Both the position numbers and the translations under genes were made by a program. This document shows positions 16,558-57,741 of a stretch of DNA of 64,000 nucleotides, in pieces. Where the stretch lies: NCBI GenBank assembly GCA_965644265.1, contig OZ286459.1, positions 27,342,001 to 27,406,000 on the forward strand, in the 5' to 3' direction. The notes below the pieces were generated by a model, which worked only from the letters and a program-made list of their open reading frames with translations, was not told the origin of the DNA and searched no databases. Origin of the DNA: Glycera tridactyla (taxonomy: Eukaryota). Position 1 is the stretch's first letter, and every line of letters starts with the position of its first letter.

Positions 16558-19500
16558 CTGCAAGCAAATAACACCAATATATAATAACGAAAATGGCACA
16601 GGGAAAACCGCCATAGTATCCTAAACTGTAGCTTCGTATCCCAAAAGAAAATGGCCGATATATCGGGAGTTGTTCACCTTGTCACGTGATCGACCTTCGA
16701 TCTCTCAATCACGTGACAAAGCAACGGTACCAACACAGTAGCCATTTGCTGAGGAAAGGAGTCAGTCGATTCCTTAAAGCTCTGACTTTGCAACCCTATC
16801 TATGAGTAACGTGAACTTCTACATTACCATATATAGTGTTTGTCTGTTTGTTTGTTTGAGATGCAACGACATGTATCAACCCAGAGGCTTATGTATACCA
16901 TGTGTTCCGGGTAAATGAAAGTTGGATATTCTCTCCCCTACAGACATCACTCACACAAACCCTGAACCAAAGATGATGGGGAACCTGAAAGGTTGTCGTA
17001 TTCACTTGATGTATTGCAATGCATGAGAAAAAACTCATCTAATGTGGCTTGGTTGGTTTATCACATAGATGTGACATTTTCATTGAAGTATCGGGTGTTA
17101 AGCATTACTTGTGATACTTCACAGCTGGGTGAGAACTACTTTTTGACAATTCCACACCTAATCCATGTCATAAAAGCAAGAATATATGGCAGTGAGGTAA
17201 AATCATAACACGAAAATCATTGTGAATTTTGCTGGATGTCACTCAGCCTTCAGCATCATGATGCCCTGCAAAATTCACAGCTTGCTTGGTATAGCATTTT
17301 TACTTCACGGCCATATATTCCTGTTATAACCTCCAATCAGGGCAGCTAGAATAATTGTTTGTTTGAGGTTCAATGGCATGTATCAAGCCTATTGTCATGT
17401 ATGCTGTGTGTTCCTTGTTAATGAAAGCTAAATGTTCTCTCCCCTGCAGACATCACTCTCACAAACCCTGAACACAAGATGATGGGGAACCTGAAACTTA
17501 AGCTGCCAACATACTTTCATTCAAAAAAAAAACAATCAAAAGGAGGTAAACCTCTCATATCTTTCCCCCTTTGGCTGCAACATAAACAAGTGATTGCTTT
17601 CACGACCTACCTCTCCCATTTTGTTCTTCGCATATTCTATACGGATGCCTCCGCGCTCAGATGAGAGAAGAACAAAACCCTGCAATCTATTTAGTGCTTC
17701 TGTGGCAAAGCATAGGTCCTGCAACAGCAAAACAAACATTCATCAAAACGTTGTTCCTCACCGAAATACATGCATACAAATTCAAATTCAGAATCTAGCT
17801 AATTTTCAATAATCAATCAAACAAAAGCTAATCTCACCCTAGAAAACTAACATCCTGTCTCAAAATCATTGATCGACAGCTTCCGAGAATCTCGTGATTT
17901 TCAAATTTCGCAACATAAACAACGTGAAATGAGCAATAATTCACACACTGAATTAGATTCTAATCACATATAAGTATACTATTTGGTTACTTTCCCCATA
18001 TAAATCAATTCCCTAGAAATGTTCAGGGAATGAGAACTACTCATCTCATACCATGCCCAGAAATGTACATATATGCACATCAGCTGAACTTATACAGTCA
18101 ACCCCCTTGAGTTCACATGTTGGTATATTTGGTGCAGGTTATACTAAAAGATGTGACACACATGACATGATCAGCCCACGAGATACAAAATATCACCACA
18201 TCACTGACAGAACAACAGCGTAAGTCTGTCGAATGCTGCGACAACATCAGGTATCTCATGGGTGCGGGGAACTACTACGAAAAAGGGCGTAGGAACGTAC
18301 TGGCTTATAGACACCTAGAATTATGATGCCGGTGATCATGAGAACTAGAAACAGTGCAGAATATATCACCTTGATAATAAAACAAGCCTGAGAATATCAC
18401 TAGGGAGAAGTGCTCCAAACAAATCGTAAATGAAATGATGAGATAATACTATGAAATCAACACGCTAAAATGGTTACATTTCTACAGAATATATATCTGG
18501 AATTTGAGTTTTCTCACACCATTCCACAAATATCTACATTACATTATTCAAAAGCGCATTGCCTAATACAAATAAACAGAGAGCAATGTTTCTCTCTGAC
18601 GAGGTGTAGTTGGGATAGATCGAGCAATGGCCTCCATCCAAATTAACGCAGATTCTATCTTAATATTCCACATATGTTATAACTATGCTTTGCAGTTCCG
18701 CATTGGGGTCTGGTTTGAAGGACTACAGTCAAACCTACTCGAGAGTCCACCTCTCTATAAAGGCCACCTATCTATAAAGGCGGACATGAGCTGCGACCTT
18801 GATAGTATTTTCAACAGAAAATGACCTCTCTAACAGCCACCAGCCTATGAAGGCCAGTTCCCAATGCAACCGAAGGTGGCTTTTATAGTCAGGTTCGACT
18901 GTATATAATTGAGATGACAAGTATCAGGATATCTCGTTTGTTTTTGTTTTTCTTCTATGATATATTAGGTATTGGAATCCAATACGTAGGGATCATCCAC
19001 AGGAAACTCTTAACTTCTGCACAAACGAGTGGTCATTATATTCCTGCCATGTTAAGTGACTGTCTCAGGCTTGTCTTGTGAGATTAGTTATGACAACATA
19101 GACTTAATACATGTAGTGACAACAGCAACTTTACAATGAATGACTATCGGAAGATGTAGACGGATACAGAACTCGTACAAGACATATTCATGTTTTCCTT
19201 AGAGATCACATGGAAATGCTCCAATTCATTAGTAACTACGCCACAGTGACCGTTGTCATGCTGAAGACCGAGCAAGGGGGAATATTATCACTAGTCGTCA
19301 TTGTTGTCGTCATTGTCATTGTCACTGTTGTCGTCATCGTTGTCACAACACAATGACAACTGTGTGATACGGAAGACTCGCCTACTTTTATTGATTCATG
19401 CAGGCACTACCCATGATCCCCCTCAAAAGCTGCTTCCCCCAAATATCGTCTTAACAATGACTTAACAATGACTTAAAAGTTTGTCTGCAGATGAACCTAC

Positions 19501-34500: not shown

Positions 34501-37500
34501 AGATACCCTTATCTAAGTATGGTGCCAGTCAAAACACACTAGTGATTGATGATTAGTCTGGCCGCCACTAGATGGCCGGCCAAGAAACGGTGTGGTGGTG
34601 CCGATTGTAGATCAAAGACGGTGACCGCCATAGTCAACAGCCTTTGGTGGGTGCCGATACTGTGGGAGCGCACTCTCGTGGGCAAAATGAACAAATTAGA
34701 TCACATAGAAACACATCCATCTTGCATCGAATCAAAGGCTTCACTATGGTCTCAAAATGTTATTCATGCACGGAACCGTCTCCTTGAGTGCGTCCAAAAC
34801 TCGTTTTCACACTTCACTGGTCCAGAAACACAACTACGACAATACATCCATATTCCGCCAAAAGAGGTACCTCTGTGTGGAGTGTGAATACTAGTTACAT
34901 TTTGTAGATATTACTTTTGGAAGGAGACGGGAGTTTGTGCTTTCTGGTGATATTCAAAGGGGTAAGACGGGATAAAGGTTCAAATACGGTGATAGACCTA
35001 GAGAGAGCTCTCAAACCAGCAGTCGTGCAAGCTCGGTATATCCAATGTTGAGAATTTCAAAAGGGATATTCAAGCTTGCCCTAATGCTCGTCATGAACAA
35101 CGTTGTGAGTTTCAAGATGGCAGTGTTCATATCCGTAATGCGAATACAGTCTATCAACAGAGAGAATGAAAAGTAATGCGTACCGGAACCTGCGCCAGTG
35201 CTGGATGTTGGATGAGTGTCGGGTGATGTAGAGCTGGGTTCAATTCTGACGCGTATGCGGCTAGGGGATGGGCAGCCCACGACTCGGTCATACCTGGGAA
35301 AAAGGCAGCACCTAACTCTTCTGAAAGGTTGGGAAAGAGAAGCAAACACACACCCATCAACACAACTAGTAGGGTAAGTCACATCAAACAAAACAACAAA
35401 CAAATCCATACCCATAGTCATCCGACGACATCCAAAGAATACCATCAATGATCACGATTCATCGATCATGATCACCAGAATATATCACCACAGGCGGTGA
35501 AAATAAAATCTACAAATCTTCTCACGCCTGAATTCTATTCAATCATGACAGAATTTTGAATTGCATTCTCAAGGCCTTTTTTTCAAATGATATTCTTCCC
35601 ATACATATGTCATCATAACATGTTGGAAGTGGAATGTTGTGAAGAACAGGATAATAATGTTAACAAATTTAACAAAGCACTCCACCATGATGATTGTCTG
35701 CAAGCCGGGGCTTTTGCAGAATGGTGCTCATTCAATTGTAGCTCAAATTTCGTTTCAACTCGTACCAATAGATAACAGGCAAATATGAAGATGTGGAACC
35801 TCGTGGATGTCAACACTGAAGGAAGAACCATGGATATGGATAGGTAAGTAGTATGAAGTATTTATCAGCCCTTATGTACTTTGTAGGATTGACTTTCTGG
35901 TGCCAATTGCATCGGCACTGTCCAAAAACTTCCACTTTCCTATGCCAACCATAGTGATGTTGCAATATTCTGCATAAAACCTTTACAAAGCCAATGCAAA
36001 ATTATGCAACAGGCAAGCAGCAGAGGAATGATTGCTGCATGGAAAAAGTGGCCCAAAGTTCATGAGAAATTTTTAAAGCATATAGAAGTAAATAATTTCC
36101 AAATTCAAAATTCATGTGGGTGCAATTAGAAGGCATATTCCAATCTTGACAGATGTGAAGGAATAGTCTCAAGCATTGCAGACTCACCGCCAATAGGCAA
36201 AACTCACAAATCGCAAAGGGAAAAGTACATTTAGGCCGAATGTAAGGACTCAAAAGATGGCATCACACTAATAGAACTGGTGCTTGAGAGCACAACACTG
36301 CTAGAGAATACACCAGTATATATATGTGCTCATATACTTGGACAGAGACGTGTGTAGTATACCCCATAATCAGCAAAATACATGTGCGGATTAATGCAAA
36401 TATATCATAGCAGCGATGAGTGTGGCAGTGAGATATATTGTTAATATCCCATACATTGGGAAGGTGTGCACACTAAACATTCAGAGACATCATTGATACA
36501 TAAACAAGTGATACATTCCATGTAGAATATCATTTGAATTCCATGAGCTGAGAGAATTGGCTTCACTGATTCTTCACATTTTGCAGTGATATCGCTGAAA
36601 CCATACTTTATAATTAAATATTTCAAATCATATCTCCCTTAATTCACTTCATATTACCCAAACAAACACAAGCCATGAGTGTCAATTCTGAGGGAACAAT
36701 TGTCAAATGTCATCCAAATTTATTCAAAATATTCCAAAGTGTGCAATGGCTGGCTATTGTGCAAAATCATATCCAAGACCCCAGGAAATGCCATGTTCCC
36801 ATCACAAGAAAGAAATAATCGTTGCACAAAAAATTGACACAGACATTGTATCTTATGCACGGCTGTTTTTTCATTTCAGTCAGTTCCCTACAAAGGCAAA
36901 GGGTTGTATTTTTTTGTAGAAATATAGGACTATTGAACGATGTTTAATATCTCTACTACTTCTCACCATCTCCGTCAAACCATGCACCTGTCAGCAAGCA
37001 AAGCTCTACAGACAATATCCCATCACCAAATCGGTACCACAGTGTCAATAAAATGGTACTAGGACCACATGATCCATGTCTCAAAAAAGTGACCGAATCA
37101 GCCCTAGAGTACTTTTGGGTCAATTACATCATGGAAATTATGATCTGCGAATATCCATTTTCCTTCAGAGGGGATAATTTGTTAAAGAAACTTTGACCCC
37201 ATCGATTTCATGCAATATTCTTCAAATGAAACCATCAAACTGTATGCGGAGTGCAACCAGATCAAAGTCAATTGAATGATCGGTGTGAAGAGAACAACAA
37301 AATCAATGTACACCATTGACAATTTCAGTGCAAAGGCCACATCATTTTGGTAATTTTGAAGACAGGATGGACGTGTATGACACCAAGATTATGGCATGAA
37401 GCCAATCCGTATAGAACAGAGATTCATGAAACAAGCACGCCAATGACAAGTAAATCACCCGCAATCAGCAAGCATTTTTTTATAATTCATTCCAAATCAA

Positions 37501-40500: not shown

Positions 40501-43500
40501 GGATAACGTCCAACTCGGACATCTCACGATACTATGCGCATGTGGACAGAAGGGGACATTGAGTAGAGTTGAAACTACATGATTATCAAGACATGCAACG
40601 TATGACGGAAAAATCAAAATAGTATAATTAATCATAAAGGGTATAAGTGATCCAAATGTGACTATAAAGGCAAAAGGGATGAACTCATTATTTTTACAAT
40701 TCTCATTAGAAGAAATTGTAAAAAATGATAAAAAAGGAAGGAAAAAAAAGGTAAAATTCTCTCTCATATTCTTCTCAAAAGTAAATGTTTAGCCTTTAAC
40801 TACCACATCTCCCTCACCCAAAGAAATTAGTGAGAATATATAGTTAGTCAACAGTGAATCTAATTATCGATAAATGTGCTTTAATTTTTTTTTAAATTTT
40901 TTTTATCTATGTCATTCGGCTAGTTGTGGAATCTGTAAGCGGTCACACAATGAGTGACGATGACTAGGTGAAGAAGGACAGGGGGTGTCATCAAGGGTGG
41001 CTACTTACGTCCAGTGATTGGATGCACCAGTGTTGGGTGTGTGGCAGCTGGCTGCGGCGATTGTTGCTTTGGTTTTGTGACTTTTGTGTTGCTCTTTGCG
41101 AATTCTAGACGTAGCGTCTGAGGCAAGTCAGGATCGAAACGAACACCCTGCAAAACGATCAAGATAGAACACTGAATGAAACTACCGTATGTTTCACAAT
41201 ACACCAACTGATTTCACATATATTTGTTGACTCCAATCATTTTGCAAGCCTATGGTTCTTTTGAAGAATTGATAATTCCATGTATCACAACATGAAAGAA
41301 TCCCTCTGTGTCACAAGATTTCGATCTGTAACTATATTTGTAAGTTGAAAGTTTGAAGTGTACAATGAATGCCCGTAAATCCACATAGTTCTTTTGTATT
41401 ATTCATGATAAAGCTATTAAAATTTTCATGTTTGATGCTGAATTCGAATCAAAATGGTAATCACATATATGGAATATGAATATTGAAAATTCCCATTTAT
41501 GAGTCTGGGCAGTCGGATGGCGACTGGAGTCCGAGACTGCTGGAACAGGCTGGAGATTATCCTCACAGTGCAGCTTATGTTGATCCAGATGGATCAGCCA
41601 TTGAAAGTAGATTAACCAACTCAATGCTACATAATCTACCCAGAACGACCAAATAATGATGATGAACAAAAGCGTCATCCATGCTAGTTTGATAGAGAAA
41701 TGTTACCATACAACCCACATTGCATCCAAAGGAGGATATTACAATGGAATCATTCAGTGTGTTATTCATATGAAATCAGTTGAGGATATATTACTGCGAT
41801 AATGATGAAAATTTGCATCCAAATACGACGGGTTAAAGTAGGATCATCTCTAATACGTCACTTCACCAATCAGTTCGAATTCGAGTGCGACTCTCACTGG
41901 CAGTTCAGAATCGAAATATTCATGTGTTTGCCTATGGCATGTTTAGGCCCGAGCTCTCCTACACTGACCATGCAGTCAAATTGATATCATTCATGAGTTT
42001 TCTCAGATTCCCCGGGAATGAAAATACAGGAGTAAATATAATGCTGGACTTTCATTCTGGATTCATCACTACCAGTACTATTGATATTTTTCATGATTCT
42101 AGTCCCATTCGATGACTGTCCAAGAATGTGAAGTGACTAGCATGTAGCAATGGTAAAGCTACCCATTGTCATTATCACTGCTGCAGTGTGTTTGGCTTCC
42201 CATGCGGGTGGCATGGGATCACTGATTTGACTCACAACTGTCGACTATCAAATAGGTGGATCATGAAATGTCCATGAAACGAGAAATCTTCTTTCTCCAT
42301 CTCACGCGTCTATTTCCACATATGATGATTATTTCAAGGGCTATTGAAAACAGGCCGCAATAAGCAGGAAAGCATCTTGGATTGATTGTATTCATGCCTA
42401 ATCTTGAGCAACTGTGAGATGTGGAAGAATTTGTACTCAAAATTTGTTGAAATCAACCCAATGTGTTCCTCTATGAATGACAAAGGCATAACCTCAGTCA
42501 GAATTATGGAGTTAATGGGAAAGAGCCCCCTCCCCTCCTGCATTATCCTCTCATCAGTGGTGAAAACCCCTAACCCCACCCTTCACAGCTCCTGATATCG
42601 ACTCTCACTGCACCACAGGACTGCGGGGATAATCCACAGCTCAACGCTGTGCCCTCACAAAATACACCAACCCCCTGCCCCCCCCCCCCCCCCCCCCCAT
42701 CCACCTGCTCAACCAGAGGCGGCCCGCCATACTGCAACCGAGGTAATCTATTCCCCACAAATACCAGATAATCTTCTTAATAGGAGCTCTTGATCTGCAT
42801 GGTCATGTGACCAATCACATGACCGCCCATGTGACCCAGTGTCAAATTGATTGGTGGTCATTCACGTTTGATTAGGACTAAATCCGCAGCGAGCATCGGA
42901 CCCTCCCCATTTTTCGTCGACTTATTGATTCAATTAACAGCAATGTCACCGAGCTAAGTCAGACTAAAGGTGAGATGTCTGCAGAGTTACGCGTGACGAG
43001 CGAACGCTGACTGATGAGGGGAGTTCGCTGTGCGCGTGTCCTTTGATCAGTCAACTGTTATCGTACATTCGAATAAAGCCACTTGCCCCACCCCCTAATC
43101 GCATTACGATCGCGGCCACACCTAAACTGCTAGCGTATTTCACCAATTACTATGACAACCATTATGTTGTTCTCCGCAGCCGGCCGTAATTCACATTATT
43201 ATACTGCGTCCATGTGACAAACACGTATTTATCACAACGCCCGCAGATGACAATATGGCTGCCGAGAGAAATATGAGATAATTAGTTTATCACATTTCAC
43301 CAACCAGTGATGCATCATAACACCAGTAATGGCGATTGTAACAGTGCCTGAACATGGGATATATTAGTGAAATGTCCCGCTGAAGGGGTCAGATCAGAGG
43401 TTGGGAATTACAGAGCAAACTCAAACTGAGTGCTCTCCAAGAATGCATGGAAGAATGTAGCACATTTTGGTGATGCTCCAAGTAAAAGGAACTAGAGACA

Positions 43501-46500: not shown

Positions 46501-49500
46501 AGAGGAGGTTTGACTGTATATACCAATATGCCAAGTATAATAGCCATTGGATAGCCACAGGCAGCAACAAGGAGCAGACACAAACAGGGAAGTTAATTAA
46601 GTTTTGGCTTTTGTTTGAGGAGAGAGGGAAAATGAAATCAACGTCTAGTCATTAGAGCAGGACAAAAGAGCATTGTCAGAGACCGAAGAATATTACATAA
46701 CATGAATGGAGAGGCATGAGAAATGCGTTCATTTCGGAGAGGTCACAATACAGACTGAGTTTAATTGGGTACATTTTTGGTGAAATTTCAGTGAAATTTT
46801 TGCCCCTGGTGATCTTGAAAATCATGTCACATAGACCAAAATCTAATCAGTTCATTAGACCCTCCCAAGGGGTATGCCTGCCAAATTTCATCAAATTCGG
46901 ATGAGTAGTTTTGCTGCAATCGTGCTCACGAGGTTTTGTGACAGACAGACGGACAGACGGACAGACGGACAGACGGACAGACGGACGGACGGACAGACGA
47001 ACAGACGGACAGACGGACAATACGAATTCTATATGTCTCCCCCATCAGGGGGGAGACATAATTCCAGCTCAGGGTGGCCATCGTGGGCAGGTGGCCTTTA
47101 TAGAGAGATTACATATGCAGTCTATGCACAGCAGACATTGTGAAAATCCTCTAATGTTATCACTATATGGACATATGTACCGTGAAATAAATAAAAGTTT
47201 TTGAATTTGAATCAGAATTGGATTTGAAATTGACTCTCACCTGTAGATCCTGTTTGGCAGCTTCTGCGGCACATCTTGAGTTGAACGTGACAAATCCCAC
47301 CGGCTAGAATAAGTTGAAGGACGGGGAAGGAAAAAAACAAAACTCACAGTATTAGAAATGAAAGAGAGAAAGAGATGATCGTAGGTGTCAGCATGTGCAC
47401 AGTCGCCACTTCTCAACCATCCACCACCATCCTCAACCACTCGGGGGAAAAGCACAAACCAATGCTTCGCATGTATACACACACACCCACGCACACACGC
47501 ATGCACACACGCACACACACACACACTATCATCACCTCATCACCAGTGTCATATAGAACCAAATTCCACATCTATATATTTCTGACCTTCTCAAAAGCCA
47601 AAACAACTCAATCTAAAACCTTTAGATTAATATGCATGTATTTTATTGTATCAACGAAAATAAAGAAATGTTGAATCAAATCAAATGACACGCAAATTTC
47701 AGGCTCTGATCACAATTCAATTCAGATATCAGGGGGTAATGTTCAAACTTTTGAAATTGAAATGACGATGGAATTTGGCTCTTCAATAGTGTTCATCTGC
47801 ACTTGCTTTATCATTCCAAACATTTCACAGCAAGGTCATCCTTTACTCTCAAGGTCATCAAATAGGCCACCAAATCACAGACTGATCTCAAGAGTGCTAC
47901 TGTAGAAAATTGTGACTTCATAAGACAATATTTTCAACAATTGTGCTGGTTTACTCCGGGAAAGTGAGTCACAATTTCAAAAGTCTGAAGTAGACATTGT
48001 CACAAACTTCAACTAGAGTGTGCGGAATTTTTCCACCATGAATGGGAGCAACACTGCTCGGATCAGTCTATTCTTCGGTGACCAGTACATGACCACACAA
48101 TCATGCAGTTTGGCGGGAAAATAGTAATGGTTGGACAATCGAGTAAACCTTTAAGTCGTCATGCAAATGAAGGCAGATACATCGTTAATGAGATGTACCC
48201 TACACATAGCATCACTTGCGACAAACTCTCTAGTCACGAAAAGATTCGGCAAGGGTGATGAGATTCTTTCAATAATTAGAAATGGCTAGCATAAAACTAC
48301 ATTTCACAACACACGAGAGGAATGTGCAAATATAACTCATCAGATTCTTTGTTGTGTATTTGAAATTGAATCTCTGAGTTTCTTTCCAAAGAAATTGGAT
48401 TTCATCAAACTGCAATTCAGTAAATTAACAAAGAGATCAGCATCGATTCACTACATCAGAATTTCCTCATCAATCAAAAAATTCCGTAATCGATAAATTA
48501 TCATATTCATGGGTGAAAGAATCTCATTCCTCTTGCACTCACCCTGGGAGACAAATGGACGGCAAAAGACATATCTTGACATTTAGTGGACCACGGCAAA
48601 AGACTTGAGACTGTAACTCTCAGTCAAATCAGTGGCTATTGGCTCATATCATCTCATGTCCAGTTTGTGAGAGCTGATCTGATTGGTCTGAGAGATACCA
48701 TCTCATGGCCAGTTTGTAAGAGCTGATTTGATTGGTTTGGTCTGAGAGATACCATCTCATGGCCAGTTTGTAAGAGCTGATTTTGTTGGTCAGAGAGACC
48801 AGCACAAGTCTTTGGCCTTCTGAAGTCACCAAATGACAGACACTGGACAGGACAGGACAGGACAGGACATAACGGAGACATACACACCAATAACTCACAC
48901 CACTTTCACTCACAAAATATGTAAATGGGTCAGTCATGTAGGTCATGTAAATAGGTCATGCATATTGTTACTGCTTGCAGGCCATAAGGACAAATCTTCA
49001 CTACATTTCTGCTACAGATATGCATCATTGGAACTTCTTAGAAGTACAGTGTGCTGTCAAGATGCAGGATCATAATTTGGGAAAAGCACTTGAATATGTA
49101 ATTTTGCCTGGGCAATTTGCTTTGGGCTAGTGATTTTGCATTAGATTAGAATCCATGAGTAAATCATCCATTTGTGTATCAACTGGCGTGACATAAATGT
49201 CTGATTCTACCATGGGCTTGACACATGCTTTTCTCGATTAGAGTCACGGAGTCAGGTTTGCAGTGATATGGGCAAGGATTATTTCCGCAAAACATTGGAG
49301 ACTAGTGATAAAAGTGATATTTCATGAAAAAAAATCTCATTGACATGGGAAGATAGAAATATTATTTTGGTGACGTTACAGTTGGCAGAGGTTAGCATGT
49401 CAAAATACTCATGAAAACGGGGCATAATAATGTAAAGTGTGTTTATGTGTGTATGTTTGCACAAGTGATCTCAAATAGCAGGCTTTATTCATTCGATGGA

Positions 49501-52500
49501 GTAATCTGAGAGGCACTGGCTGCCATACAATAATTTATAAAGTACATTAATATGAGGAAGAAGCCATACGGAAAGTGGGAAAATACCTGGGTGGTGAAGA
49601 TTTCAACCTAGGTCAGTGAAAAGAAATTTGAAGTAGACAAATTCAGATAGTGGACCATGCAATTTCATTGATCAAATGTGGATGATATACAAGAATGTCA
49701 AGAGTAATCTCGAAACATCTGATTAGCACATATTCTGGAGAGGTAACTCAGAAGAAAAATTATCGAAATTCCTTTCAGGAATTCAGGAAGCAACTGAAGA
49801 ATTCTGGTTACATGGAGAGCTTTTAGTTGGACCAAAGTCCATTCTATTTTGAAAATATCTTTGATAAATCACCATCCTGAAGTGACTGGATTATTTTGAG
49901 ATAAGATAAGATAAGCCGAATCATACATCTATACTCATATGAGCAGTAAATGAGTAGGGCCCAAGAGTAGCATGCAGGCACCAAGAATTCAAAATATTTG
50001 AAAACCAAATAAATCTCTTTGCAACAGTAACTGGAATCAGGATACTTGTGGCGAACAATAGACTGGAAATGAATTGATAACACATGTCTTAAGCTCATAT
50101 GAGGTGATTCTTCATACCAAAAATGTGATCTCTACCACTTCGGATGTGATTTGAATTCATCGTGAACTTCCTTGCGATTTACTCATCACTGGCAAAACCA
50201 AATAATCAAGTTTCATCCAGGATAATGCAAAAAGCAAGGGGGATGATATGTACATTCCATGTTGAGATTTGTTCCCATTCTGAGTTCTAAACCAAATGTC
50301 TTTTACGTTACAATTCAATTCAATAAAGTATCGAATCATAATTCCCTTGAAGTCATGAAAACTCAACCAAAAATACATTTTGTCATATATTACAAAATGT
50401 CAAAATTATCAAAAGAAAATTTTTCCATCAATACATCAGAATTGTCAAAAAGAATATTTTTCCTTCAATACACCAAGATTTTGAATTACGGCCAATAGGG
50501 AGGCTGCTACTAGGTTTCTGCATGCCAAGACACTAGTCCAGCAGCAAAGTGAAGTTAAACACACATACTACAGACCTGATGGTGTTTGATATCAATTAAT
50601 CAAATGATGTCCTGTGAGAAATACTTTCTGTGAAATGTGAATACAATTGATATTACATCTCAGAATGGGAACACATCATATTGGCGTGGGTGTGCTCCAT
50701 TTGGCCACACAAGGAGCCTGTCGATCTTGTCCTTGTTCGACGACCACAATCACAGCCTTTGTGAATGTTTTCACTCCATGATCCCACGCCAACTCATGAA
50801 CATGTCCATACCAGAAACTACCTGTAGTGAATATATACTACCGTATTCACTCTTTCAGATGTGTCAACCCGTTTACAATTCTAGCCATTCTGGTTTTTCC
50901 CCCAAGGATCATGACGTTAGATGGATTAAATTTACTAACATCAAAATTCAGCAAAGGAGGTTGAATTCTCAATTTTTTTATTTGACTAGGGACAGCTCTT
51001 GGTTGCATTCAATTGTACCCAAAAGATGTAAGTCAATAAACCCATTAGTAGACAAATACCTTCATTGCAAAACCACAATGATCACTCAATTTAGTTAATC
51101 ATTTCGGCTACTGGTATTTCCTTGAAAATAGCCAAAATTCTCTGAGTGAACCACCTTGCTTGACATTTTCTGGGCAGTAAGTTGAGAAGAGATGTTATCC
51201 AGTGTTCGATCTTTATGCAATGTGCAAAAGATCATGTATGTATACATGTGATTCCATATTTCGGAGGGCAAAGTTTTCATAATTGTGAGAGTAAAGTTTT
51301 CGAAATGTTTCTATACCAAATAACTTTTGGACGAATAGTGGAAAACCAAAGGCAACCTATCAGTCTATCGATCCCGCCTGGAGGATTCTGTCAATTGTGA
51401 AATACATCCGTCTGGAGGAATACGGTAGATGGAGTACAACAGGATTTGTATTTTTACCGGCAGATGGTGATGGAAGTCGTCCGCGCTTGGGGGTACATGT
51501 GGGTTGTACGAGTTTCCGTTGTAACCACCGGTCGCAGCTGCATTCATCTGTTGTTTGGCAAGTTCGATATAAAGTTTATTTATTTGATCATTTGTTGGAG
51601 CGTAAGTTTATGTTTCTCCGAGTGCAGCAGTTTGATAATAGCAAGTGTAACCACTAAGTAGCAAGGCCGTACCACCCCGGCAAAAAGTGGCGGCCAGTAA
51701 CCCATTATGTGTAAACCGTCTATGTGTGTTTTTCGTTTAATCGTGATGTGAGTCAAAAATGCAGCGGGCAGCAAGTCCGGGCGGCAAGTCCGGCAGATGC
51801 AAAAGCAATCAAGATGCACTGTTGTCAATCATGTGAGCGGTGAGTGGCGGACCGACTTCCGTGAAGTTTGGGCACAAACGGAATCGTGCGCAGGCGCATA
51901 TGCTTGCGTGCGTCCCGCTTGATTCTGTGTGAGCCCGAACTTGAGCAGAATTGGTCCCCCGGGGAGGTCATTCAAGTCAGGCATTCTCAAGATGCGTATT
52001 CCCACCAACCATGCACAATCAGGCATGCACAAATGCACAAACACATAGTGACATTCAATAACATTGCACCATCCCTGGCGGACATATTGATTTTATATTT
52101 ACCAGACAAAAAAATTAAAAATAACCTTCGCTAGTTACAGAATAGATGATTTGGCTTCATGGAGAAATTCCGAACAAAATAAATGTGGAAATAAATCGTT
52201 TTCAGTCAATCAAAGTGATCAAGAATATGATATCACTCAAGATATGAAATAATACAAATGAAGCATCTTCGTGGAGCACAAACGATCCCATCCAAAAAGA
52301 TTCATTTGATCCAGATTTGTCAAAATAATTCAAATGGGCTTGCAAAGAGAAACATTTGTATGTCTGAACCAGGGATAGTGGATAAAATTGGACAGATGGT
52401 ACATTCATATCCATGCCTTTCAGGTCACCGATTCCTGCAATCCGCAACTTCTATGGTAATTTGAACACATTTTGTGTTTCTTCAATGAAGCTCTCAATAT

Positions 52501-53312
52501 TATCTTCATCAACCAAGGAACACAACTCAATTGTGAAATTTCATCCTCAAGAGATGATTTTGTATTCACAACCAAATATGATTGCCTACATTGGTGGCTA
52601 CAGTGGTCAGATCTTGAAAGGCATAAGATACGAACATTCCAGACAAATTCTCATCATACATATTTCAACAAGAGACAAGAAACAAGGTCAATTAACAGTA
52701 CGAGAAAACAGCTTAACTTTATATAGACTGGATGAGAAAAATCACTATACATTGACATTTATCTTTGACTGGCAAGCATACTGCTTTAGATTCTATATAA
52801 GACGATACATAGGGACATGAGCAACATAATTTACTTAGCTCGACACAAAGTTTGTATGCAGCTTAAACATCGATTTTACCCAAATCTCTACAGCCCCGCC
52901 CTCCCCAACATGGGACCACTTGCTTCCCAAGCACGAGATCGAAAAATTATACATGTTAGTAAATGTGACAGAAGGCATTAACGAGAATATATATATGCAC
53001 TAAGCCGGTTAGGACTAGAATCAACGGAAGCCCATGCATATTAGTCATTCACAAACTAGGATGCACAAACGGATGCACAAACGGTTAGCTACATATGCAT
53101 GCTACATGGCAAGATTGTCTCATCATGTGACCAACAGCCTTCTGTAAGGGCATGCCTGATTGGTCCAATTTACATATGCATATACAGAGTAGTGGCTCAC
53201 TCCCGCCGCGATTTATGACAAACTCTTATCGTTGATTACAGAGATAGCACTTCTATGGAGTACGCAGCATTGGAAATTTTGATTTCTGATGCATGCTTTG
53301 TAATATCATTTC

Positions 53313-53398
<86 letters not shown>

Positions 53399-56300
53399 GC
53401 GAGTTTGTGTGCAGATGCATGTGTGGGTGTGTACATGGGTGTGTGTGTGTGCAGGCTGTGTGGGTGGGTATATATATACATATATATATATGTGGGTGAA
53501 AATCTACATCAATAGGTTAGCATGATGTAATTCTCTCACAGCACTCTGCCATGCAAGAACAACGCAGAATAATGCAAGAAAAAACATCATCCCATCTATT
53601 CAATCGGAGGATCTTTCAAACATTAAGCCTCAAGGCAATCGAAAGGATCCGTTCCGTTCCGCAATTATTACATCAGAAAGTCAGCCATGCAGTACGGAGC
53701 CGATGAATAAGATATGACGATATGCAGAGTTTGTCACAAATTTGTCGGGAGTGCATTCAGGGTGATTCAAAACATGAGTGTCACGATGCAGTGTGTGACA
53801 TTGGGGCGATCACTCTGCGATATATTTGCATGCATCGGGACCCATCTCACTGAAGAAAACTGCAGAATGAGGCGTCACGGCTCGATTAAGATTCTGAGGA
53901 TGACGACAGTAGCTGATCGGACCGGCGTCAATTCTGAGCACAGTTCATCTTCAGTGAGATATCTCCCTGGATAGGCGGGGCATGTTCAGATCAATCTGAA
54001 CATTTAGATCTTATTATGAGAGAGAATTCACAAGAAGGGACTTCTTACTTATCAAGCTAACATAATTCATATAATTAGCACCGATTGATTCTCTGGTTTT
54101 TAATCCGATACAAACTATTCAAAATCCTTGCATAGCAGGTGGAGCCAAAAATATTGACCGGAAATGCAAACTTCCAAGATTGAATATCACACAGATCCAA
54201 AATTTTATTCATTTCAGGAGGTAAGAACAGTCACTAATATTTGATTAATTGACCAAAAATCAGACAAGATCACTTTTTCAGATGATATAAGCATAGTAAT
54301 ACTTCTAAGCTATCAGAGCAAATTTCAAAGTCATTGTTTTGAATTAGGAATACTAAAAATCTCAGATAATGTTTCAAACATGAAGTTTTCTTCTGGAATT
54401 TCAAATTTCAAATTTGCAGCAGTGCCAATTATAAGAACTATGGAAAGCAGATTACATTCCTCCAAGAATTTTGCGCAACAGGACAAACTGGATGAATGAA
54501 ATACAGGATTTGCCTGAGACCGGCAAAATTTCTGCCAGTTTTTGAAACTTTCTTGTAATCAGGTCATGCCAAGACAGAAGGTTATTTGAAACAGAGGGAT
54601 CTGACAGCACTTGGAAGGACAGTACAAACTGTACCTCGTGCAATTCTCTAGTTTGTACACAATATGAAATTCACGTGAAACATCTTCACAATTCTCTTAC
54701 ATAATCTATCTGAACAATTTTCCTGACAAATTCATCACTTCAGGAGCAGAAATTTGCGTAATTGATAACAGATTGAGAGGAGAATGTTTCTCGGTTCGAG
54801 ATATATGTCTCACTTAGTCGCCTTCCCATACTACCTGCATGAATAGAACTGAAATCTTTCCAAAATCAAATTTTCGAATGCCATATTTTATGTTAGTGCA
54901 TTGGGCAGGGATGGGACCTAGAGGGGAGATAGCTGTTTTGAAAAATTAGTTAGCTAGCAAATTCACCAGAGGGCAGAGTGATCTAGGGGGGTGTGGGTGC
55001 GGTGATGGCATACTTACTGAGGTGCTTTTGCCGTTTTTGCCAGTGACTTTCAAGAGTGATCCTTCATAGCCCTGTAAAATAGTGATGAAAGACAGGCGAT
55101 AGTGCAGTCAGTGGTGCAGACCTAAGAAGGTCGCGATCGCTACTTACACTTGGGTTTTTGCCCGCCTTCCCCATGATTTTTAACAGTGAGCTTTCGTAGC
55201 CCTGTAAATGGGATGAGGAAAATCGTCATTGTACAACAGGGGTGAGAAGAAGACTGCTTCGTAACAAGTAAAAGATGGATCATGAAACCACACCAGTCAT
55301 TAGCCAACCAGATTTTTATAATCGTTTTTTTTTTCTTTTTTTTTCACTTGCATGCCACTCACGGTTGGCCTTCAACATTTCTATCTCTTCATGTTGGTTG
55401 CCTCAAAGCCGTCAAGGTCATCGAGCAATGCCTAATAGGCACATCTCACATTACGACCATGACCAACAGATTATCTACTCCTCATCAATGAAACAAAAAT
55501 TTCAATCGAAAAAAATTAAATTATTCTCATTTCCGGAATCGTCAAACATATCTAGAAATAGAGCTGTCTCAGAGACAGTGTCTCTGCGAAAGACTCCATA
55601 AGCTATAAGAGAATTTGCATGCTGTGTTCTCTCTGGAAGAATATTCAACTATCACTGAAGATAGGGATTTAACATTAAAATTTTTTTTTTAAAGAAATAT
55701 TTTGATTAGATTTGAGCCACAATGATTTATCTGGACTCAGATACTTGTGCGAAACAAACAAATACAGTCTGTGCCAGTACAGAATAGATACTGTTTTGTG
55801 CAGAGGATATTTGAGTACATTAAACACAAATCAACAGAACTCAAATGAGATCATGATGCATAAGAGCCGCAGCCCGTAAGCAACCTCCCGATTTAAAACA
55901 AAACTAATAGGGCACTTGCAGTTATCTGTGCAGACCATGACAGGCAGTACAACCGCCATCTTATCACAGGCACTTCAAAAGAGTATCTTTCATCAATGCC
56001 TCATGCCTTATAGGGAGTGCAACTATGGTTAGAGGGGTGCCCCGCTCAGATTTAGTGAATTAACCTTGAACCCTGCGAACGACTTTTGCTGAGATTCAGG
56101 ATCTCGAGGGAATCTTTTAAAGTCCACCAAAGTGGGTATCAATGTAATCATCTTGGTATTAAAAGAGCTCTTGAAATCAAGACTTCTTATTGATGATGTA
56201 ACCTTATGTGAACAGCTGAACTTTCGAGATTAGCATCAGCATGATTTCTGGTGAGAATACGTTGACCCTCTTGAAATTGCATGCTATTCGATCCACTATT

Positions 56301-57741
56301 GCCAATGCTCACGATTCATCAATGATCGACAACAACCATGTTTTGTCTCTATCGTCGAATTAGAAAAATAATGGATAAAATATTTTTTATATCACATTGG
56401 CAGAGAAAACCAGATGTCATACACCTAAGTACATCATTAAGACATGGATGCATGAGCAAAGATGCGTTTGAAACGCTGATGACATACACAGATGCGTTTA
56501 AAACGCTTTCGATTTCGCGATCATATCACTGGATTGTGTTGATTGATTGATCTGGGTGGCTAATGACTAATACTGGCAGGTGTGAGTCCAACTCAGTGAA
56601 TCCAACTCAACGGTGACCATAAATACGTGCAAAATACTGGGGGGTGATCCATGATAATAATGATTGGCAGAGTTAGCGCAACGATTAGAGTCGATCATCG
56701 CTTCGAATCGTCATTTGAGACTTTGCAGCATGCAGTATCAAATGACGGCTCAAAAGTGGCCGATTCCAAATCACTGTGAACCACTACGGTGTGCAAGGGC
56801 CTGTACCTCGCGGTCTCTTCCCTTCCGTCTTGCAGCTGGCGCCGCCGATGCCAAGGCCGCTGCCAAGACCACTGCCTCAAAGACTGGGCACCTATCTGCG
56901 CACTTCCTCGCAGTATCAACTGCTCTATCCCGACCAGAGCCTTCTTTCCATCTCACCTCTCTGCCTGTCCGGGTATAGATACAAAGTGTATCTAAGTCAC
57001 GACTGAACCTTAGTCGGATCTATCCTCATCCATTACAACCCACCTCCATTTGATTAACAGCATCCATCCCTAAATCAAAATGCTACAAATTTCAATAGAG
57101 AGACTGAAATATTACTGATAGATACTTGATTTTCATTTCCCCATTGTAATTTTCATTGTCAATCAGTACTCCAGGAAATACCATCATTTAGCAAAAGATG
57201 GGAGAGGAATAATTCTGTACATATTCATGTGCAACAGATGTCTCAGATATAAGGCTCATTATTAATGTTTTTGAAAATTCTATAGGAGCCAGAGTTTCAA
57301 GATTCCAAAAGGCTGAAACTCATGAGAATGAGGTCCAAACTGGAGTATGATGTGAGATGAATATATTTTTACCAAAAAATTTGAATCGTTGAAATAAAGT
57401 GGACTGAAAATGTAGATGAGATATGATTCCGGAGTTAAATATCTGGCATGAGAATGCTGATTGCTCTAGATTTGGATCCCGGTATCTCCGGGCGAGTTCA
57501 TCTCCACTTCAAACTATGATTCAGCATCGTTATCTGGCCAGCATGCCTGACAATGGTGATCCCAGGCAGGACAGCCACCTAGTGTAGCTGTCCGGAACTA
57601 TCAGTGACATGGCACATGCAGAGATGGTGCTGCTAGTGTGAGCTGGGAAAACAAACAACATACCTTGTAGGCTCGGAATAGTAGGTAGAGTTCTCTAGGC
57701 TTTGCATCCATTGGCAAACCACTCACGAATAGTGTGCGCAC
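16495..57741 (-). CDS. cpo: Couch potato / MEC-8 / RBPMS-family RNA-binding protein with two RRMs (spliced; 9 coding exons per isoform located, first exon missing)
   Basis: Hand-spliced exons of 78+54+63+139+137+236+70+108+63 = 948 nt, all AG/GT-bounded with matching phases. They read [35 protein letters not shown]...PVGFVTF...[22 protein letters not shown]...[10 protein letters not shown]...[24 protein letters not shown]...[25 protein letters not shown], the recognisable Cpo/MEC-8/RBPMS RRM signature. Confidence 0.96.
16837..16999 (-). mobile_element. SINE-like repeat family S, copy 4
   Basis: Same core. Confidence 0.75.
17355..17496 (-). mobile_element. SINE-like repeat family S, copy 5
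   Basis: Same core. Confidence 0.75.
17611..17718 (-). CDS. cpo: cpo exon: RRM2 end ([36 protein letters not shown])
   Basis: ttgctgttgcag|GAC...GAG|gtaggt; 108 nt. Confidence 0.95.
18724..18903. mobile_element. MITE family M (Tc1/mariner-pogo-like TIRs, TA-flanked), copy 1
   Basis: TA-cagtcaaacct...aggttcgactg-TA terminal inverted repeats; internal ctctataaagaccacc-type subrepeats. Confidence 0.8.
20178..20356. mobile_element. MITE family M, copy 2
   Basis: tacagtcaaacct...gacaggttcgactgta. Confidence 0.82.
20756..20825 (-). CDS. cpo: cpo exon: RRM2 ([23 protein letters not shown])
   Basis: ttattttatttcag|T TTT...CAG|gtaggc; 70 nt, phase 2/0; absent from the ORF track because it is short. 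Confidence 0.95.
21517..21587 (-). mobile_element. SINE-like repeat family S, copy 6 (short)
   Basis: ggtttaatggcatgtatcaaccca...ctggtcaatgaaagctaggtgtt. Confidence 0.7.
23864..24099 (-). CDS. cpo: cpo exon: linker and RRM2 start (VHGYAM...[24 protein letters not shown])
   Basis: gtctttggcag|GTT...AGC AG|gtagga; 236 nt, phase 0/2. Confidence 0.94.
29055..29240. other. Assembly gap (N run)
   Basis: 186 N. Confidence 1.
29241..29360. repeat. Low-complexity (TGCA/ATGC/AC) repeat adjoining an assembly gap
   Basis: Direct inspection. Confidence 0.7.
29782..29886. mobile_element. MITE family M, internally deleted copy 3
   Basis: tacagtcgaatcc...gagaccacc...ctgagctgcaactgtg...ggattgactgta. Confidence 0.65.
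32845..32857 (+). promoter_or_regulatory. CTCF-like motif
   Basis: CCACCAGGTGGCG matches the CCASYAGRKGGC core; motif match only. Confidence 0.35.
33096..33259. other. Assembly gap (N run)
   Basis: 164 N. Confidence 1.
34565..34576 (+). promoter_or_regulatory. CTCF-like motif
   Basis: CCACTAGATGGC matches the CCASYAGRKGGC core; motif match only. Confidence 0.35.
35184..35320 (-). CDS. cpo: cpo exon: His/Pro/Ala-rich linker (ELGAAFFPG...HPALAQVP)
   Basis: tctctttcccaacctttcag|AA GAG...CCG|gtacgc; 137 nt, phase 1/0. Confidence 0.9.
39186..39313. other. Assembly gap (N run)
   Basis: 128 N. Confidence 1.
41009..41147 (-). CDS. cpo: cpo exon: RRM1 end and linker ([22 protein letters not shown]...HPITG)
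   Basis: ttttgcag|GGT...GGA C|gtaagt; 139 nt, phase 0/1; visible in ORF 41001..41207. Confidence 0.96.
42790..43260. promoter_or_regulatory. CpG-rich intronic element with clustered TCATGTGA-type E-boxes and CCAAT boxes
   Basis: ggtcatgtga-ccaa-tcacatgacc, catgtgac, gattgg; locally high CpG. Confidence 0.4.
43907..44068. mobile_element. MITE family M, copy 4 (reverse orientation)
   Basis: tacagttgaagctg...gcaggttggactgta; internal sequence is the reverse complement of copy 2. Confidence 0.8.
44067..44172. mobile_element. MITE family M, copy 5 (forward, shares its TA with copy 4)
   Basis: tacagttgaaactg...gacaggttcgactgta. Confidence 0.8.
45405..45540. mobile_element. MITE family M, degenerate partial copy 6
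   Basis: tacagtcaagcctgcctataaagg...gagaggtcattttctgttgaaa. Confidence 0.5.
45570..46290. mobile_element. Degenerate HINE-like repeat fragments
   Basis: atgtctcccccccc, ttgaatttggttcagcggtttg and tgaccttgacctttgacc motifs typical of these interspersed repeats; boundaries approximate. Confidence 0.4.
46337..46518. mobile_element. MITE family M, copy 7 (reverse orientation)
   Basis: tacaggcggacctc...ggaggtttgactgta; reverse complement aligns along the length of copy 2. Confidence 0.82.
46660..47062 (+). mobile_element. HINE/DINE-1-like non-autonomous Helentron-type element
   Basis: ccaaatttcatcaaattcggatgagtagttttg..., (GACA/GACG)n microsatellite at ~46940-47018, and 3' hairpin tatgtctccccc-atcag-gggggagacata (47032-47060); left boundary uncertain. 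Confidence 0.65.
47067..47110. mobile_element. MITE family M, fragment (copy 8)
   Basis: gctcagggtggcc...ggtggcctttatagagag. Confidence 0.4.
47241..47303 (-). CDS. cpo: cpo exon: RRM1 RNP1 region ([21 protein letters not shown])
   Basis: long pyrimidine tract ...ccttcaacttattctag|CCG...CAG|gtgaga; 63 nt. Confidence 0.95.
47476..47526. repeat. Degenerate (CA)n microsatellite
   Basis: Direct inspection. Confidence 0.85.
48645..48800. repeat. Tandem repeat, 3 units of ~49-54 bp
   Basis: catctcatggccagtttgtaagagctgatt...ggtctgagagatac units start at 48650, 48699 and 48753. Confidence 0.92.
53318..53393. repeat. (GT)n microsatellite with degenerate extension to ~53495
   Basis: Direct inspection. 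Confidence 0.98.
55018..55071 (-). CDS. cpo: cpo alternative exon B ([18 protein letters not shown]), canonical-type copy
   Basis: catcactattttacag|GGC...TCA|gtaagt; 54 nt, phase 0/0; resembles the GYEGSLLKV motif of Cpo orthologues. Confidence 0.95.
55148..55201 (-). CDS. cpo: cpo alternative exon A ([18 protein letters not shown]), putative mutually exclusive exon
   Basis: ttcctcatcccatttacag|GGC...AGT|gtaagt; 54 nt, phase 0/0; 12/18 aa identical to exon B. Confidence 0.85.
57664..57741 (-). CDS. cpo: cpo exon: RRM1 start ([26 protein letters not shown])
   Basis: ttgttgttttgcttgacag|GTG...AAG|gtatgt; 78 nt, phase 0/0; RNP2-like LFVSGL. Confidence 0.96.

What the first reader, a model, noticed from the sequence alone, without database searches (positions are those of the whole stretch)
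55018..55201. Tandemly duplicated 54-nt exon pair: putative mutually exclusive exons inside RRM1 of couch potato
Seen: two exons of identical length (54 nt) and phase (0/0), each with ttacag|GGC acceptor and gtaagt donor, separated by a 76-nt intron. They encode [18 protein letters not shown] and [18 protein letters not shown] (12/18 aa identical). Six of the 12 identical residues use different synonymous codons, which points to an old duplication with both copies kept under protein-level selection. Knowledge: this segment is strand beta2 plus the beta2-beta3 loop, next to the RNA-binding sheet of the RRM. Including both exons would duplicate beta2, and skipping both would delete it. Inference: the gene makes two RRM1 variants with potentially different RNA affinity or specificity. 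I am not aware of this being described for Cpo/MEC-8/RBPMS, but I cannot search. Exon A is absent from the ORF track and would easily be missed by annotation.
Basis: partly seen in the sequence, partly recalled or inferred. Interest (0 to 1): 0.85.

Follow-up and report, generated by a model that had tools for sequence, protein, structure and literature searches.

The report
Ancient either/or exons in Couch-potato RRM
This worm-like animal's Couch potato/RBPMS-type RNA-binding gene has two alternative versions of one 54-base exon, shared with molluscs, annelids and ribbon worms, and the less common version replaces an amino acid that reads the first letter of the protein's RNA target.

Summary
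On the minus strand, exon A (55201-55148) and exon B (55071-55018) are both 54 nt and phase 0, have matching splice sites, and lie 76 nt apart between RRM1 exons of a two-RRM Couch potato/MEC-8-type gene.

The pair is old and maintained. The same A-then-B arrangement is present in Capitella, Owenia, Tubulanus and Mytilus DNA. Database isoforms with A only or B only exist for Lineus, oysters, mussels, abalone, octopus and others. Cross-phylum pN/pS for exon A is 0.03-0.27, with synonymous sites saturated. I found no A-type exon in arthropods, nematodes, rotifers or vertebrates.

The exon encodes MEC-8 residues 56-73. Every A version has Met where B has the Thr that hydrogen-bonds the guanine of GCAC.

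Two new observations:
- A CAC cluster, the family's own binding motif, lies just downstream of exon A in all five genomes (33 observed, 7.3 expected).
- Exon B is nearly frozen at synonymous sites against a relative's transcript.

Together these suggest self-regulated exon choice, which is an inference.

Strict mutual exclusion is unproven: mollusc models also include A+B and neither exon. I found no paper describing the pair, but automatic annotations contain it. The scan had already noted this 76-nt intron in this genome (s1-302997).

The parts
57664..57741 (-). Constitutive RRM1 exon (beta1/RNP2 and dimerisation helix alpha1; [26 protein letters not shown]), donor gtatgt
   Evidence: aligns to MEC-8 residues 30-55
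55148..55201 (-). Exon A (54 nt, phase 0/0; [18 protein letters not shown]): the 'Met-type' version of the alpha1-beta2 linker, beta2 and the beta2-beta3 loop
   Evidence: Orthologous A exons are in Capitella, Owenia, Tubulanus and Mytilus DNA and in Lineus and mollusc isoforms
55072..55147 (-). 76-nt intron between A and B. It holds 4 CAC motifs (two of them UGCAC). The best branch-point match is CUGAC, with the A at intron position 40 (window 55108), followed by a pyrimidine tract
   Evidence: The branch point is predicted from consensus only
55018..55071 (-). Exon B (54 nt, phase 0/0; [18 protein letters not shown]): the canonical 'Thr-type' version found in all animals. It contains 3 CAC motifs and is almost invariant at synonymous sites against a related species' mRNA
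54977..55017 (-). Start of the intron downstream of exon B, with five overlapping-counted CAC motifs (four non-overlapping) in 41 nt
   Evidence: (sequence printed)
47241..47303 (-). Constitutive RRM1 exon (beta3/RNP1 PVGFVTF and alpha2)
41009..41147 (-). Constitutive RRM1 exon (alpha2-beta4 loop, beta4, and the C-terminal RNA-contact segment [11 protein letters not shown])

Best explanation
The two 54-nt exons are an ancient, conserved pair of alternative exons. They arose by tandem exon duplication in the Couch potato/MEC-8/RBPMS orthologue of a lophotrochozoan, probably an annelid. An mRNA normally takes A or B, which gives two versions of RRM1 that differ only in MEC-8 residues 56-73 (the alpha1-beta2 linker, beta2 and the beta2-beta3 loop). 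Shown: exon B is the canonical version found in all animals. It carries the Thr at exon position 10 (MEC-8 Thr65) whose hydroxyl hydrogen-bonds the guanine of the GCAC target. Shown: every exon A in every phylum examined has Met at that position, and its loop differs from B. Leu6 and Lys8, which contact the CAC core, are kept. Inferred: the A isoform still binds CAC but reads the preceding base differently, most likely with weaker preference for G. Inferred: the choice between A and B is regulated through a conserved cluster of CAC motifs just downstream of exon A, which in this genome also lies just upstream of and inside exon B. These motifs are most plausibly bound by the Cpo protein itself or a paralogue. 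By the RBPMS splicing map, such binding would favour A and repress B. Inferred, and specific to this genome: the 76-nt intron, with its predicted branch point only 40 nt from the exon A donor, may also hinder A-to-B splicing sterically.
For: Anatomy and two-copy status.

Same order and phase in other genomes: the A-B intron is 163 nt in Capitella, 532 nt in Owenia, 666 nt in Tubulanus and 1189 nt in Mytilus, with canonical splice sites.

Isoform evidence: A-only and B-only isoforms that are otherwise identical exist for Lineus (X2/X6 against X1/X3-X5), Saccostrea, Magallana, Ostrea, Mytilus, Haliotis, Mya, Ruditapes, Octopus, a unionid, Pecten and Owenia. Two short transcript contigs, P0353 and P0414, carry A only.

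Selection: A-A pN/pS is 0.03-0.27 with pS 0.64-1.17. Met10 is invariant in A and Thr10 is invariant in B.

Structure mapping: the alignment to 5bjr/5tkz gives exon = G56-S73. The contacts of Thr65, Ser73 and Lys63, and the 6-14-fold affinity loss when G is replaced, come from PMC5311487. RBPMS Leu54, Lys56 and Gln61 come from PMC4783296. The A-type RRM models as an RRM whose closest solved structures are MEC-8 and RBPMS.

Regulation: CAC is the most enriched of the 64 trinucleotides in the 150 nt or less downstream of exon A across the five genomes (33 observed, 7.3 expected, P=2.8e-12; 3 to 8 per species). Flanks of the constitutive exons of the same gene are not enriched. Exon B has excess CAC compared with synonymous shuffles (10 observed, about 3.7 expected, P=4e-4). 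Against a related species' mRNA, exon B third positions are 16/18 identical, compared with 29/93 in the flanking exons (Fisher P=6e-6). The RBPMS position-dependent map is from PMC6613909. The steric threshold of about 50 nt is from PMC7969005.
Against: - No RNA-seq or transcript for this species shows exon A in use. The only close-relative transcript (L002) is a B isoform.
- Twelve database models in molluscs and Owenia include A+B and three skip both. Because both exons are 54 nt, neither outcome shifts the frame, so nonsense-mediated decay cannot enforce exclusivity.
- The A-B intron is long in the other genomes, so steric exclusion cannot be the conserved mechanism. A 40-nt donor-to-branch-point distance may be enough for splicing in invertebrates with short introns.
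- No significant RNA structure spans the pair (z=+0.40).
- No binding data exist for any A-type RRM. One lost hydrogen bond out of four to guanine may have a small effect.
- CAC clusters could be bound by factors other than Cpo.
Confidence: 0.72

Rival explanations
1. The two exons are independent cassette exons rather than an either/or pair. All four combinations (A, B, A+B, neither) would then be produced at meaningful levels, and the A+B form would be a functional RRM with an extended beta2-beta3 loop.
For: A+B models exist in Magallana, Ostrea, two Mytilus species, Argonauta, Babylonia and Owenia. Skip-both models exist in Crassostrea angulata and Mya. Both outcomes keep the reading frame. 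An AlphaFold model of an A+B RRM keeps the RRM core, with one copy as beta2 and the other as a low-confidence loop.
Against: Lineus has only A-only and B-only isoforms. The transcript-derived contigs found carry a single copy. In this genome the A-B intron is only 76 nt and its predicted branch point is 40 nt from the donor. Gnomon-type models need only a few junction reads, so A+B may be splicing noise. Skipping both exons deletes beta2 and three RNA-contact residues.
Confidence: 0.2
2. In this species exon A is a relic or rarely used pseudo-exon, and the gene effectively makes only the B form.
For: The only transcript from a relative is B-type. Exon A evolves faster than exon B: 11-13 of 18 residues are identical between phyla for A, against 16.5-16.8 of 18 for B. 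The Tubulanus and Capitella gene models omit A.
Against: Exon A has an intact frame, a good pyrimidine tract, an AG acceptor and a gtaagt donor. Its first 11 residues are identical to the Capitella A exon although synonymous divergence is saturated. It is used in annotated isoforms of many relatives. The CAC cluster next to it is conserved.
Confidence: 0.06
3. The similarity is a chance match or an assembly duplication, and there are not two real exons.
For: None beyond the short length of the segments.
Against: The cross score of 61 compares with a ceiling below 28 for the rest of the window. The copies share only 35/54 bases, so they are not an assembly duplicate. The same pair is present in four other genomes.
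Confidence: 0.01

Closest known systems
[quoted passage not shown] 2016, PMC4783296)
   Same: The RNP2, RNP1, alpha1 dimer-interface and C-terminal contact sequences are the same. The B exon is 15/18 identical to MEC-8 residues 56-73 and keeps Lys63, Thr65 and Ser73. The gene has two RRMs, like MEC-8.
   Different: The literature treats this RRM as identical in all splice isoforms of the family. Here, part of its RNA-binding surface is itself alternatively spliced, and the A form lacks the guanine-reading Thr.
Tpm1 exon 2/3 and Actn1 NM/SM mutually exclusive pairs switched by RBPMS through CAC clusters (Nakagaki-Silva et al. 2019, PMC6613909)
   Same: In both cases an exon pair has dense CAC clusters upstream of or within one exon, the location from which RBPMS represses, or downstream, from which it activates. 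From my own knowledge, Tpm1 exons 2/3 are also kept exclusive by a branch point too close to the upstream donor.
   Different: Here the regulated gene encodes the CAC-binding protein itself, so the loop would be autoregulatory. No binding or splicing experiment exists. The organisms are lophotrochozoans.
OGDH exons 4a/4b, with exclusivity enforced by branch points 25-46 nt from the upstream donor (PMC7969005)
   Same: There is a short intervening intron, and the (predicted) branch point lies below the roughly 50-nt steric threshold: 40 nt here.
   Different: The branch point here is only a consensus match (CUGAC). The short intron is specific to this lineage (163-1189 nt in the other genomes). 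The threshold was established in vertebrates.
Rbfox autoregulated skipping of an RRM exon (Damianov and Black 2010; cited from my own knowledge, not checked here)
   Same: A splicing regulator whose own binding motif flanks an alternative exon that encodes part of its RRM.
   Different: Rbfox skips the exon and makes an RRM-defective, dominant-negative form. Here the exon would be swapped for a paralogous copy, giving an intact RRM with altered contact residues.

Membership tests
RBPMS / Couch potato / MEC-8 family (RRM1) | Conserved RRM with RNP2 (LFVSGL), RNP1 (VGFVTF) and the C-terminal CAC-contact segment ([11 protein letters not shown]) | tested here: met
   The window exons encode all three motifs. 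The near-identical Lineus orthologue matches 5bjr (MEC-8) at E=2.6e-39 and 5det (RBPMS) at E=1.3e-38. The model of the A-type RRM has 5bjr, 5det and 5tkz as its best fold matches.
RBPMS / Couch potato / MEC-8 family (RRM1) | Dimerisation residues on helix alpha1 (MEC-8 D41, K43, R45, E46, Y48, L49, L50, R52) | tested here: met
   The upstream exon encodes [13 protein letters not shown], identical to MEC-8 across these positions (residue list from PMC5311487). These residues lie outside the alternative exon, so both isoforms keep them.
RBPMS / Couch potato / MEC-8 family (RRM1) | Guanine-reading Thr (MEC-8 Thr65) on beta2 | tested here: met
   Met for exon B (Thr at exon position 10). NOT met for exon A, where Met occupies position 10 in all seven species compared. 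This row is the point of the finding.
Mutually exclusive exon pair from tandem exon duplication | Adjacent homologous exons of the same length and phase, each with its own splice sites | tested here: met
   Both exons are 54 nt and phase 0/0, with ttacag|G acceptors and |gtaagt donors, and share 12/18 residues.
Mutually exclusive exon pair from tandem exon duplication | Mature mRNAs contain exactly one of the two exons | tested here: inconclusive
   Among the database proteins retrieved, 25 carry A only and many carry B only, but 12 carry A+B and 3 carry neither. Lineus shows only single-copy isoforms. No transcript data for this species were available.
Mutually exclusive exon pair from tandem exon duplication | A mechanism that enforces exclusivity (steric hindrance, competing RNA pairing, frame shift with NMD, or incompatible spliceosomes) | tested here: inconclusive
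   Steric hindrance is possible in this genome only: the intron is 76 nt and the predicted branch point is 40 nt from the donor, against a threshold of about 50 nt. NMD is excluded because 54 is a multiple of 3. Competing RNA pairing is not supported (z=+0.40). All four splice sites are GT-AG.
Exons under RBPMS-type position-dependent control | Clusters of CAC motifs within about 150 nt of the regulated exon | tested here: met
   There are 33 CAC against 7.3 expected downstream of exon A over five genomes. CAC is the top-ranked trinucleotide, and control flanks are not enriched. In the window, 200-nt windows around the pair reach 12 CAC, against a mean of 3.2.
Exons under RBPMS-type position-dependent control | Direct binding by the protein and a dose-dependent change in exon use | not testable with these tools
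   This needs CLIP or gel shift, plus knockdown or over-expression with minigenes.

The most novel reading that the evidence does not exclude
The pair is a self-regulated specificity switch that has been kept for more than half a billion years in annelids, molluscs and ribbon worms. Cpo protein would bind the conserved CAC cluster between the two exons of its own pre-mRNA. That binding would shift splicing from the Thr-type exon B to the Met-type exon A, producing a protein that no longer reads the guanine of GCAC in the same way. Rising Cpo levels would then change which RNAs Cpo binds, not only how much Cpo there is.
Probability: 0.3. Interest if true: 0.75.

Novelty: new member of a known kind. 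Interest (0 to 1): 0.55.

Why it matters
RBPMS-family proteins are studied as regulators of splicing and RNA localisation: smooth muscle, heart, retina and oocytes in vertebrates, the nervous system and diapause in flies, and touch neurons in worms. The field treats their N-terminal RRM as constant across isoforms (PMC5311487). This locus shows that a large branch of animals instead keeps two versions of the RNA-contact strand. The second version consistently lacks a residue shown crystallographically to read the guanine of GCAC. That gives a natural, testable 'mutant' for the role of that contact. It also gives a candidate case in which an RNA-binding protein changes its own target specificity by alternative splicing, possibly under its own control. 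On the practical side, exon A is missed by several gene models (Tubulanus, Capitella), and the oyster orthologues are misnamed 'U1 snRNP A-like'.

Tried and rejected
- Competing RNA structure across the pair: a 281-nt fold is no better than shuffles (z=+0.40). The 76-nt intron alone folds somewhat better than shuffles (z=-2.29, 5 of 200 shuffles). I did not build on that.
- Known RNA families in 54500-55700: none in Rfam at E<=1.
- A third exon copy in the window: none.
I used diagnostic residues, gene order and pN instead. Overall A-A identity is only slightly above A-B identity, so orthology of the A exons rests mainly on the invariant Met10, the non-Gly at position 4, the non-Asn at position 13 and the conserved A-before-B order.
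- Genomic DNA for more species: the Lineus gene is too long (134 kb). The Patella, Mya, Dimorphilus, Lingula and short Mytilus isoform look-ups were not on record.
- An A-type exon outside Lophotrochozoa: none among several hundred arthropod, nematode, rotifer and vertebrate proteins. In Daphnia pulex DNA the B-type segment is fused to the upstream exon and there is no second copy.
- Literature: six full-text searches found no paper describing an alternative exon inside the RRM of Cpo, MEC-8 or RBPMS.
- GCAC rather than CAC as the enriched motif downstream of A: not supported. TCAC and CACC are the top 4-mers.
Full report
**1. The observation**

On the minus strand, the window carries an acceptor ttacag followed by a 54-nt open segment (55201-55148, [18 protein letters not shown]) and a gtaagt donor. 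A 76-nt intron (55147-55072) follows. Then comes a second ttacag acceptor, a second 54-nt segment (55071-55018, [18 protein letters not shown]) and a second gtaagt donor.

The two segments share 12/18 residues and 35/54 bases. Six of the twelve shared residues use different codons.

- 57741-57664 encodes [26 protein letters not shown].
- 47303-47241 encodes [21 protein letters not shown].
- 41147-41009 carries GVRFDP...[11 protein letters not shown].

A six-frame BLOSUM62 scan of the whole window finds only these two segments (cross score 61). Nothing else scores 28 or more. The same scan finds exons of a second RRM at about 23925, 20776 and 17643 on the minus strand. The gene therefore has the two-RRM layout of MEC-8, and 'RRM1' is the right label.

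**2. What organism and gene**

The best protein matches are lophotrochozoan Couch potato/RBPMS-like proteins, not arthropod ones. Exon B is identical to that of the ribbon worms Lineus and Tubulanus. The first 11 residues of exon A are identical to the A exon of the annelid Capitella. Earlier notes of the scan call this genome probably annelid, and I did not establish the species. A 6.5-kb transcript contig from a public RNA run (L002) comes from a related but clearly different species and is a B isoform.

**3. The pair is old and both copies are kept**

*Genomic DNA.* Four other animals have the same arrangement: an A-type exon first and a B-type exon second, in the same phase, with canonical splice sites.

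| Species | A exon | A-B intron |
|---|---|---|
| Capitella teleta | [21 protein letters not shown] (63 nt) | 163 nt |
| Owenia fusiformis | [18 protein letters not shown] | 532 nt |
| Tubulanus polymorphus | GYENALLKVMGKTGKNNA | 666 nt |
| Mytilus galloprovincialis | GYENALLKVMGKPGKNNS | 1189 nt |

*Database isoforms.* Isoforms that differ only in this exon exist for Lineus longissimus (X2 and X6 carry [18 protein letters not shown]; X1 and X3-X5 carry B). They also exist for Saccostrea, Magallana, Ostrea, Mytilus, Haliotis, Mya, Ruditapes, Mercenaria, Dreissena, Pecten, a unionid, Octopus and Owenia.

*Transcripts.* Two short contigs that must be transcripts carry A only: P0353 (317 aa on 1.4 kb) and P0414 (270 aa on 1.5 kb).

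*Selection.* Nei-Gojobori counts over the first 15 codons give A-A pN/pS of 0.03-0.27 with pS of 0.64-1.17, which is saturated. B-B pN/pS is 0-0.17. Exon A evolves faster than exon B: 11-13 of 18 residues are identical between phyla for A, against 16.5-16.8 of 18 for B. It is nevertheless clearly constrained.

*Diagnostic residues.* The diagnostic positions separate A from B cleanly: position 10 is Met in every A and Thr in every B. Position 4 is never Gly in A and always Gly in B. Position 13 is never Asn in A and always Asn in B.

*Distribution.* Among several hundred arthropod, nematode, rotifer and vertebrate family members retrieved, none has an A-type segment. In Daphnia pulex DNA the B-type segment is fused to the upstream exon and there is no second copy. 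The simplest reading is a single duplication before molluscs, annelids and nemerteans diverged.

**4. What the exon encodes**

Aligning to the MEC-8 RRM1 crystal construct fixes the numbering: the alternative exon is exactly MEC-8 Gly56-Ser73.

In the MEC-8-GCAC complex (PMC5311487):
- The Thr65 hydroxyl and the Ser73 carbonyl or hydroxyl hydrogen-bond N2 and N1 of the guanine.
- Lys63 can contact the adenine.
- Replacing the guanines costs 6-10-fold in affinity for MEC-8, 7-14-fold for Drosophila Cpo and 3-15-fold for RBPMS.

In RBPMS, the equivalents Leu54 (stacks on C4), Lys56 and Gln61 also touch the RNA (PMC4783296).

These residues are exon positions 6, 8, 10 and 18. All A exons keep Leu6 and Lys8, change Thr10 to Met and remodel the loop.

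An AlphaFold model of the Lineus A-type RRM gives a normal RRM (mean pLDDT 76.8). The exon forms the alpha1-beta2 linker, beta2 (exon positions 7-11) and the beta2-beta3 loop. The closest solved structures are MEC-8 and RBPMS RRMs.

The dimer interface (alpha1 and the alpha2-beta4 loop) lies outside the exon. The expected difference between the isoforms is therefore in RNA reading, most plausibly at the base 5' of CAC. This is an inference, because no A-type domain has been assayed. [quoted passage not shown] That statement does not hold for this branch of animals.

**5. How the choice may be made**

(a) *Frame.* Both exons are multiples of three, so A+B and skip-both stay in frame. Nonsense-mediated decay cannot police the choice.

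(b) *Steric hindrance.* In this genome the intron is only 76 nt. Its one good branch-point match (CUGAC) puts the adenosine 40 nt from the exon A donor and 36 nt from the acceptor, ahead of a pyrimidine tract. That is below the roughly 50-nt threshold cited for simultaneous U1 and U2 assembly (PMC7969005). The threshold comes from vertebrates, the branch point is only predicted, and the intron is 163-1189 nt in the other genomes. Steric exclusion is therefore at most a local reinforcement.

(c) *RNA structure.* None stands out across the pair, and there is no Rfam match.

(d) *A conserved CAC cluster.* In the first 150 nt or less downstream of exon A, CAC is the most enriched of all 64 trinucleotides over the five genomes. 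There are 33 against 7.3 expected, with 3, 7, 8, 8 and 7 per species (Poisson P=2.8e-12). Four control flanks of constitutive exons in the same genes are not enriched: 12 observed against 8.9 expected, 5 against 8.0, 6 against 8.9 and 8 against 8.0. In the window the cluster continues through exon B, which has 3 CAC against 0.7 expected from synonymous shuffles (P=0.009). Over five species the exon B count is 10 against about 3.7 (P=4e-4). It also continues into the first 41 nt after exon B.

(e) *Synonymous conservation of exon B.* Against the related species' mRNA, exon B differs at only 2 of 54 bases, and third positions are 16/18 identical. The flanking RRM exons encode all but identical protein (one residue differs, RAYK against RGYK) but are saturated at third positions (29/93 identical). 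The Fisher test gives P=6e-6. This is the usual signature of an exon that carries dense splicing information.

CAC, and especially tandem CAC, is the recognition element of this protein family. RBPMS represses exons when its sites lie within or just upstream and activates them when its sites lie downstream, including at the Tpm1 and Actn1 mutually exclusive pairs (PMC6613909). The cluster here lies downstream of A, and in this genome also upstream of and inside B. The most economical hypothesis is that Cpo, or a paralogue, promotes A and represses B on its own pre-mRNA. That step is inferred and not shown.

**6. Limits**

- No transcript of this species was available.
- Twelve database models carry A+B and three carry neither exon. 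These are mostly pipeline models, which need only a few junction reads. They mean that strict exclusivity cannot be claimed for the clade.
- An AlphaFold model of an A+B domain keeps the RRM core, with one copy as beta2 and the other as a low-confidence loop. Co-inclusion therefore need not be lethal to the fold.

**7. Novelty**

Tandem-duplicated alternative exons are a well-known kind of feature. This pair is already present in RefSeq and other automatic annotations, often under misleading names such as 'U1 small nuclear ribonucleoprotein A-like'. Six full-text searches found no paper that describes it. New here:
- its phylogenetic span;
- its mapping onto the guanine-reading residues;
- the conserved CAC cluster;
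- the synonymous freeze of exon B.

The scan had already noted the 76-nt intron of this same locus (s1-302997).

**8. Verdict**

Interest is moderate to good, because it yields a sharp and testable hypothesis about how an RNA-binding protein family tunes, and perhaps self-tunes, its specificity.

Noticed in passing
window 55018-55071 (minus) compared with L002:617-670: Exon B differs at only 2 of 54 bases from a related species' mRNA. The neighbouring RRM exons, which encode near-identical protein (one residue differs), are only 70-77% identical and are saturated at third codon positions.
   Followed up: yes
window 53310-53400 (minus strand): A long (CA)n microsatellite, preceded by CA/CCCA-rich sequence, lies in the intron about 1.6 kb downstream of exon B. 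It gives the highest CAC count in the window (56 per 200 nt). It is probably a simple repeat, and whether it matters for splicing is unknown.
   Followed up: partly
window about 23925, 20776 and 17643 (minus); also 35190-35320, 20755-20825 and 17606-17721: These are further exons of the same gene. They include a second RRM ([10 protein letters not shown]..., ...SPVAFVEF..., ...[14 protein letters not shown]), so the protein has the MEC-8-like two-RRM layout. The related transcript L002 instead ends in a short isoform without RRM2.
   Followed up: partly
L003:11280-11333 (Tubulanus polymorphus) and L005:11108-11170 (Capitella teleta): Intact A-type exons with good splice sites are absent from the deposited gene models of these species. 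The Tubulanus model also starts inside the upstream exon (MDAKPRELY...). The Capitella A exon is 63 nt, three codons longer than the others.
   Followed up: partly
L006:12405-12530 (Daphnia pulex): The segment homologous to exon B is fused to the upstream exon, with no intron after ...RAYD. A roughly 75-nt intron follows it, and no second copy is present.
   Followed up: partly
database names: RefSeq names the oyster and mussel orthologues 'U1 small nuclear ribonucleoprotein A-like', 'protein WHI4-like' or 'DAZ-associated protein 1-like'. By sequence they are Couch potato/RBPMS-family proteins.
   Followed up: no
heterodont bivalves (P0322, P0328, P0340, P0345, P0414), Octopus/Argonauta (P0350, P0296) and Pecten (P0354): The A exon varies in length between clades: 19 aa with an extra Ile in heterodonts, 17 aa in cephalopods and 21 aa in Pecten. 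The B exon is 18 aa everywhere. The beta2-beta3 loop of the A form is therefore free to change length.
   Followed up: no
window 29245-29706, 30632-31171 and 50637-51098 (plus strand): Three ORFs of 153-179 aa lie on the opposite strand within introns of the gene. None has a Pfam match above threshold.
   Followed up: partly
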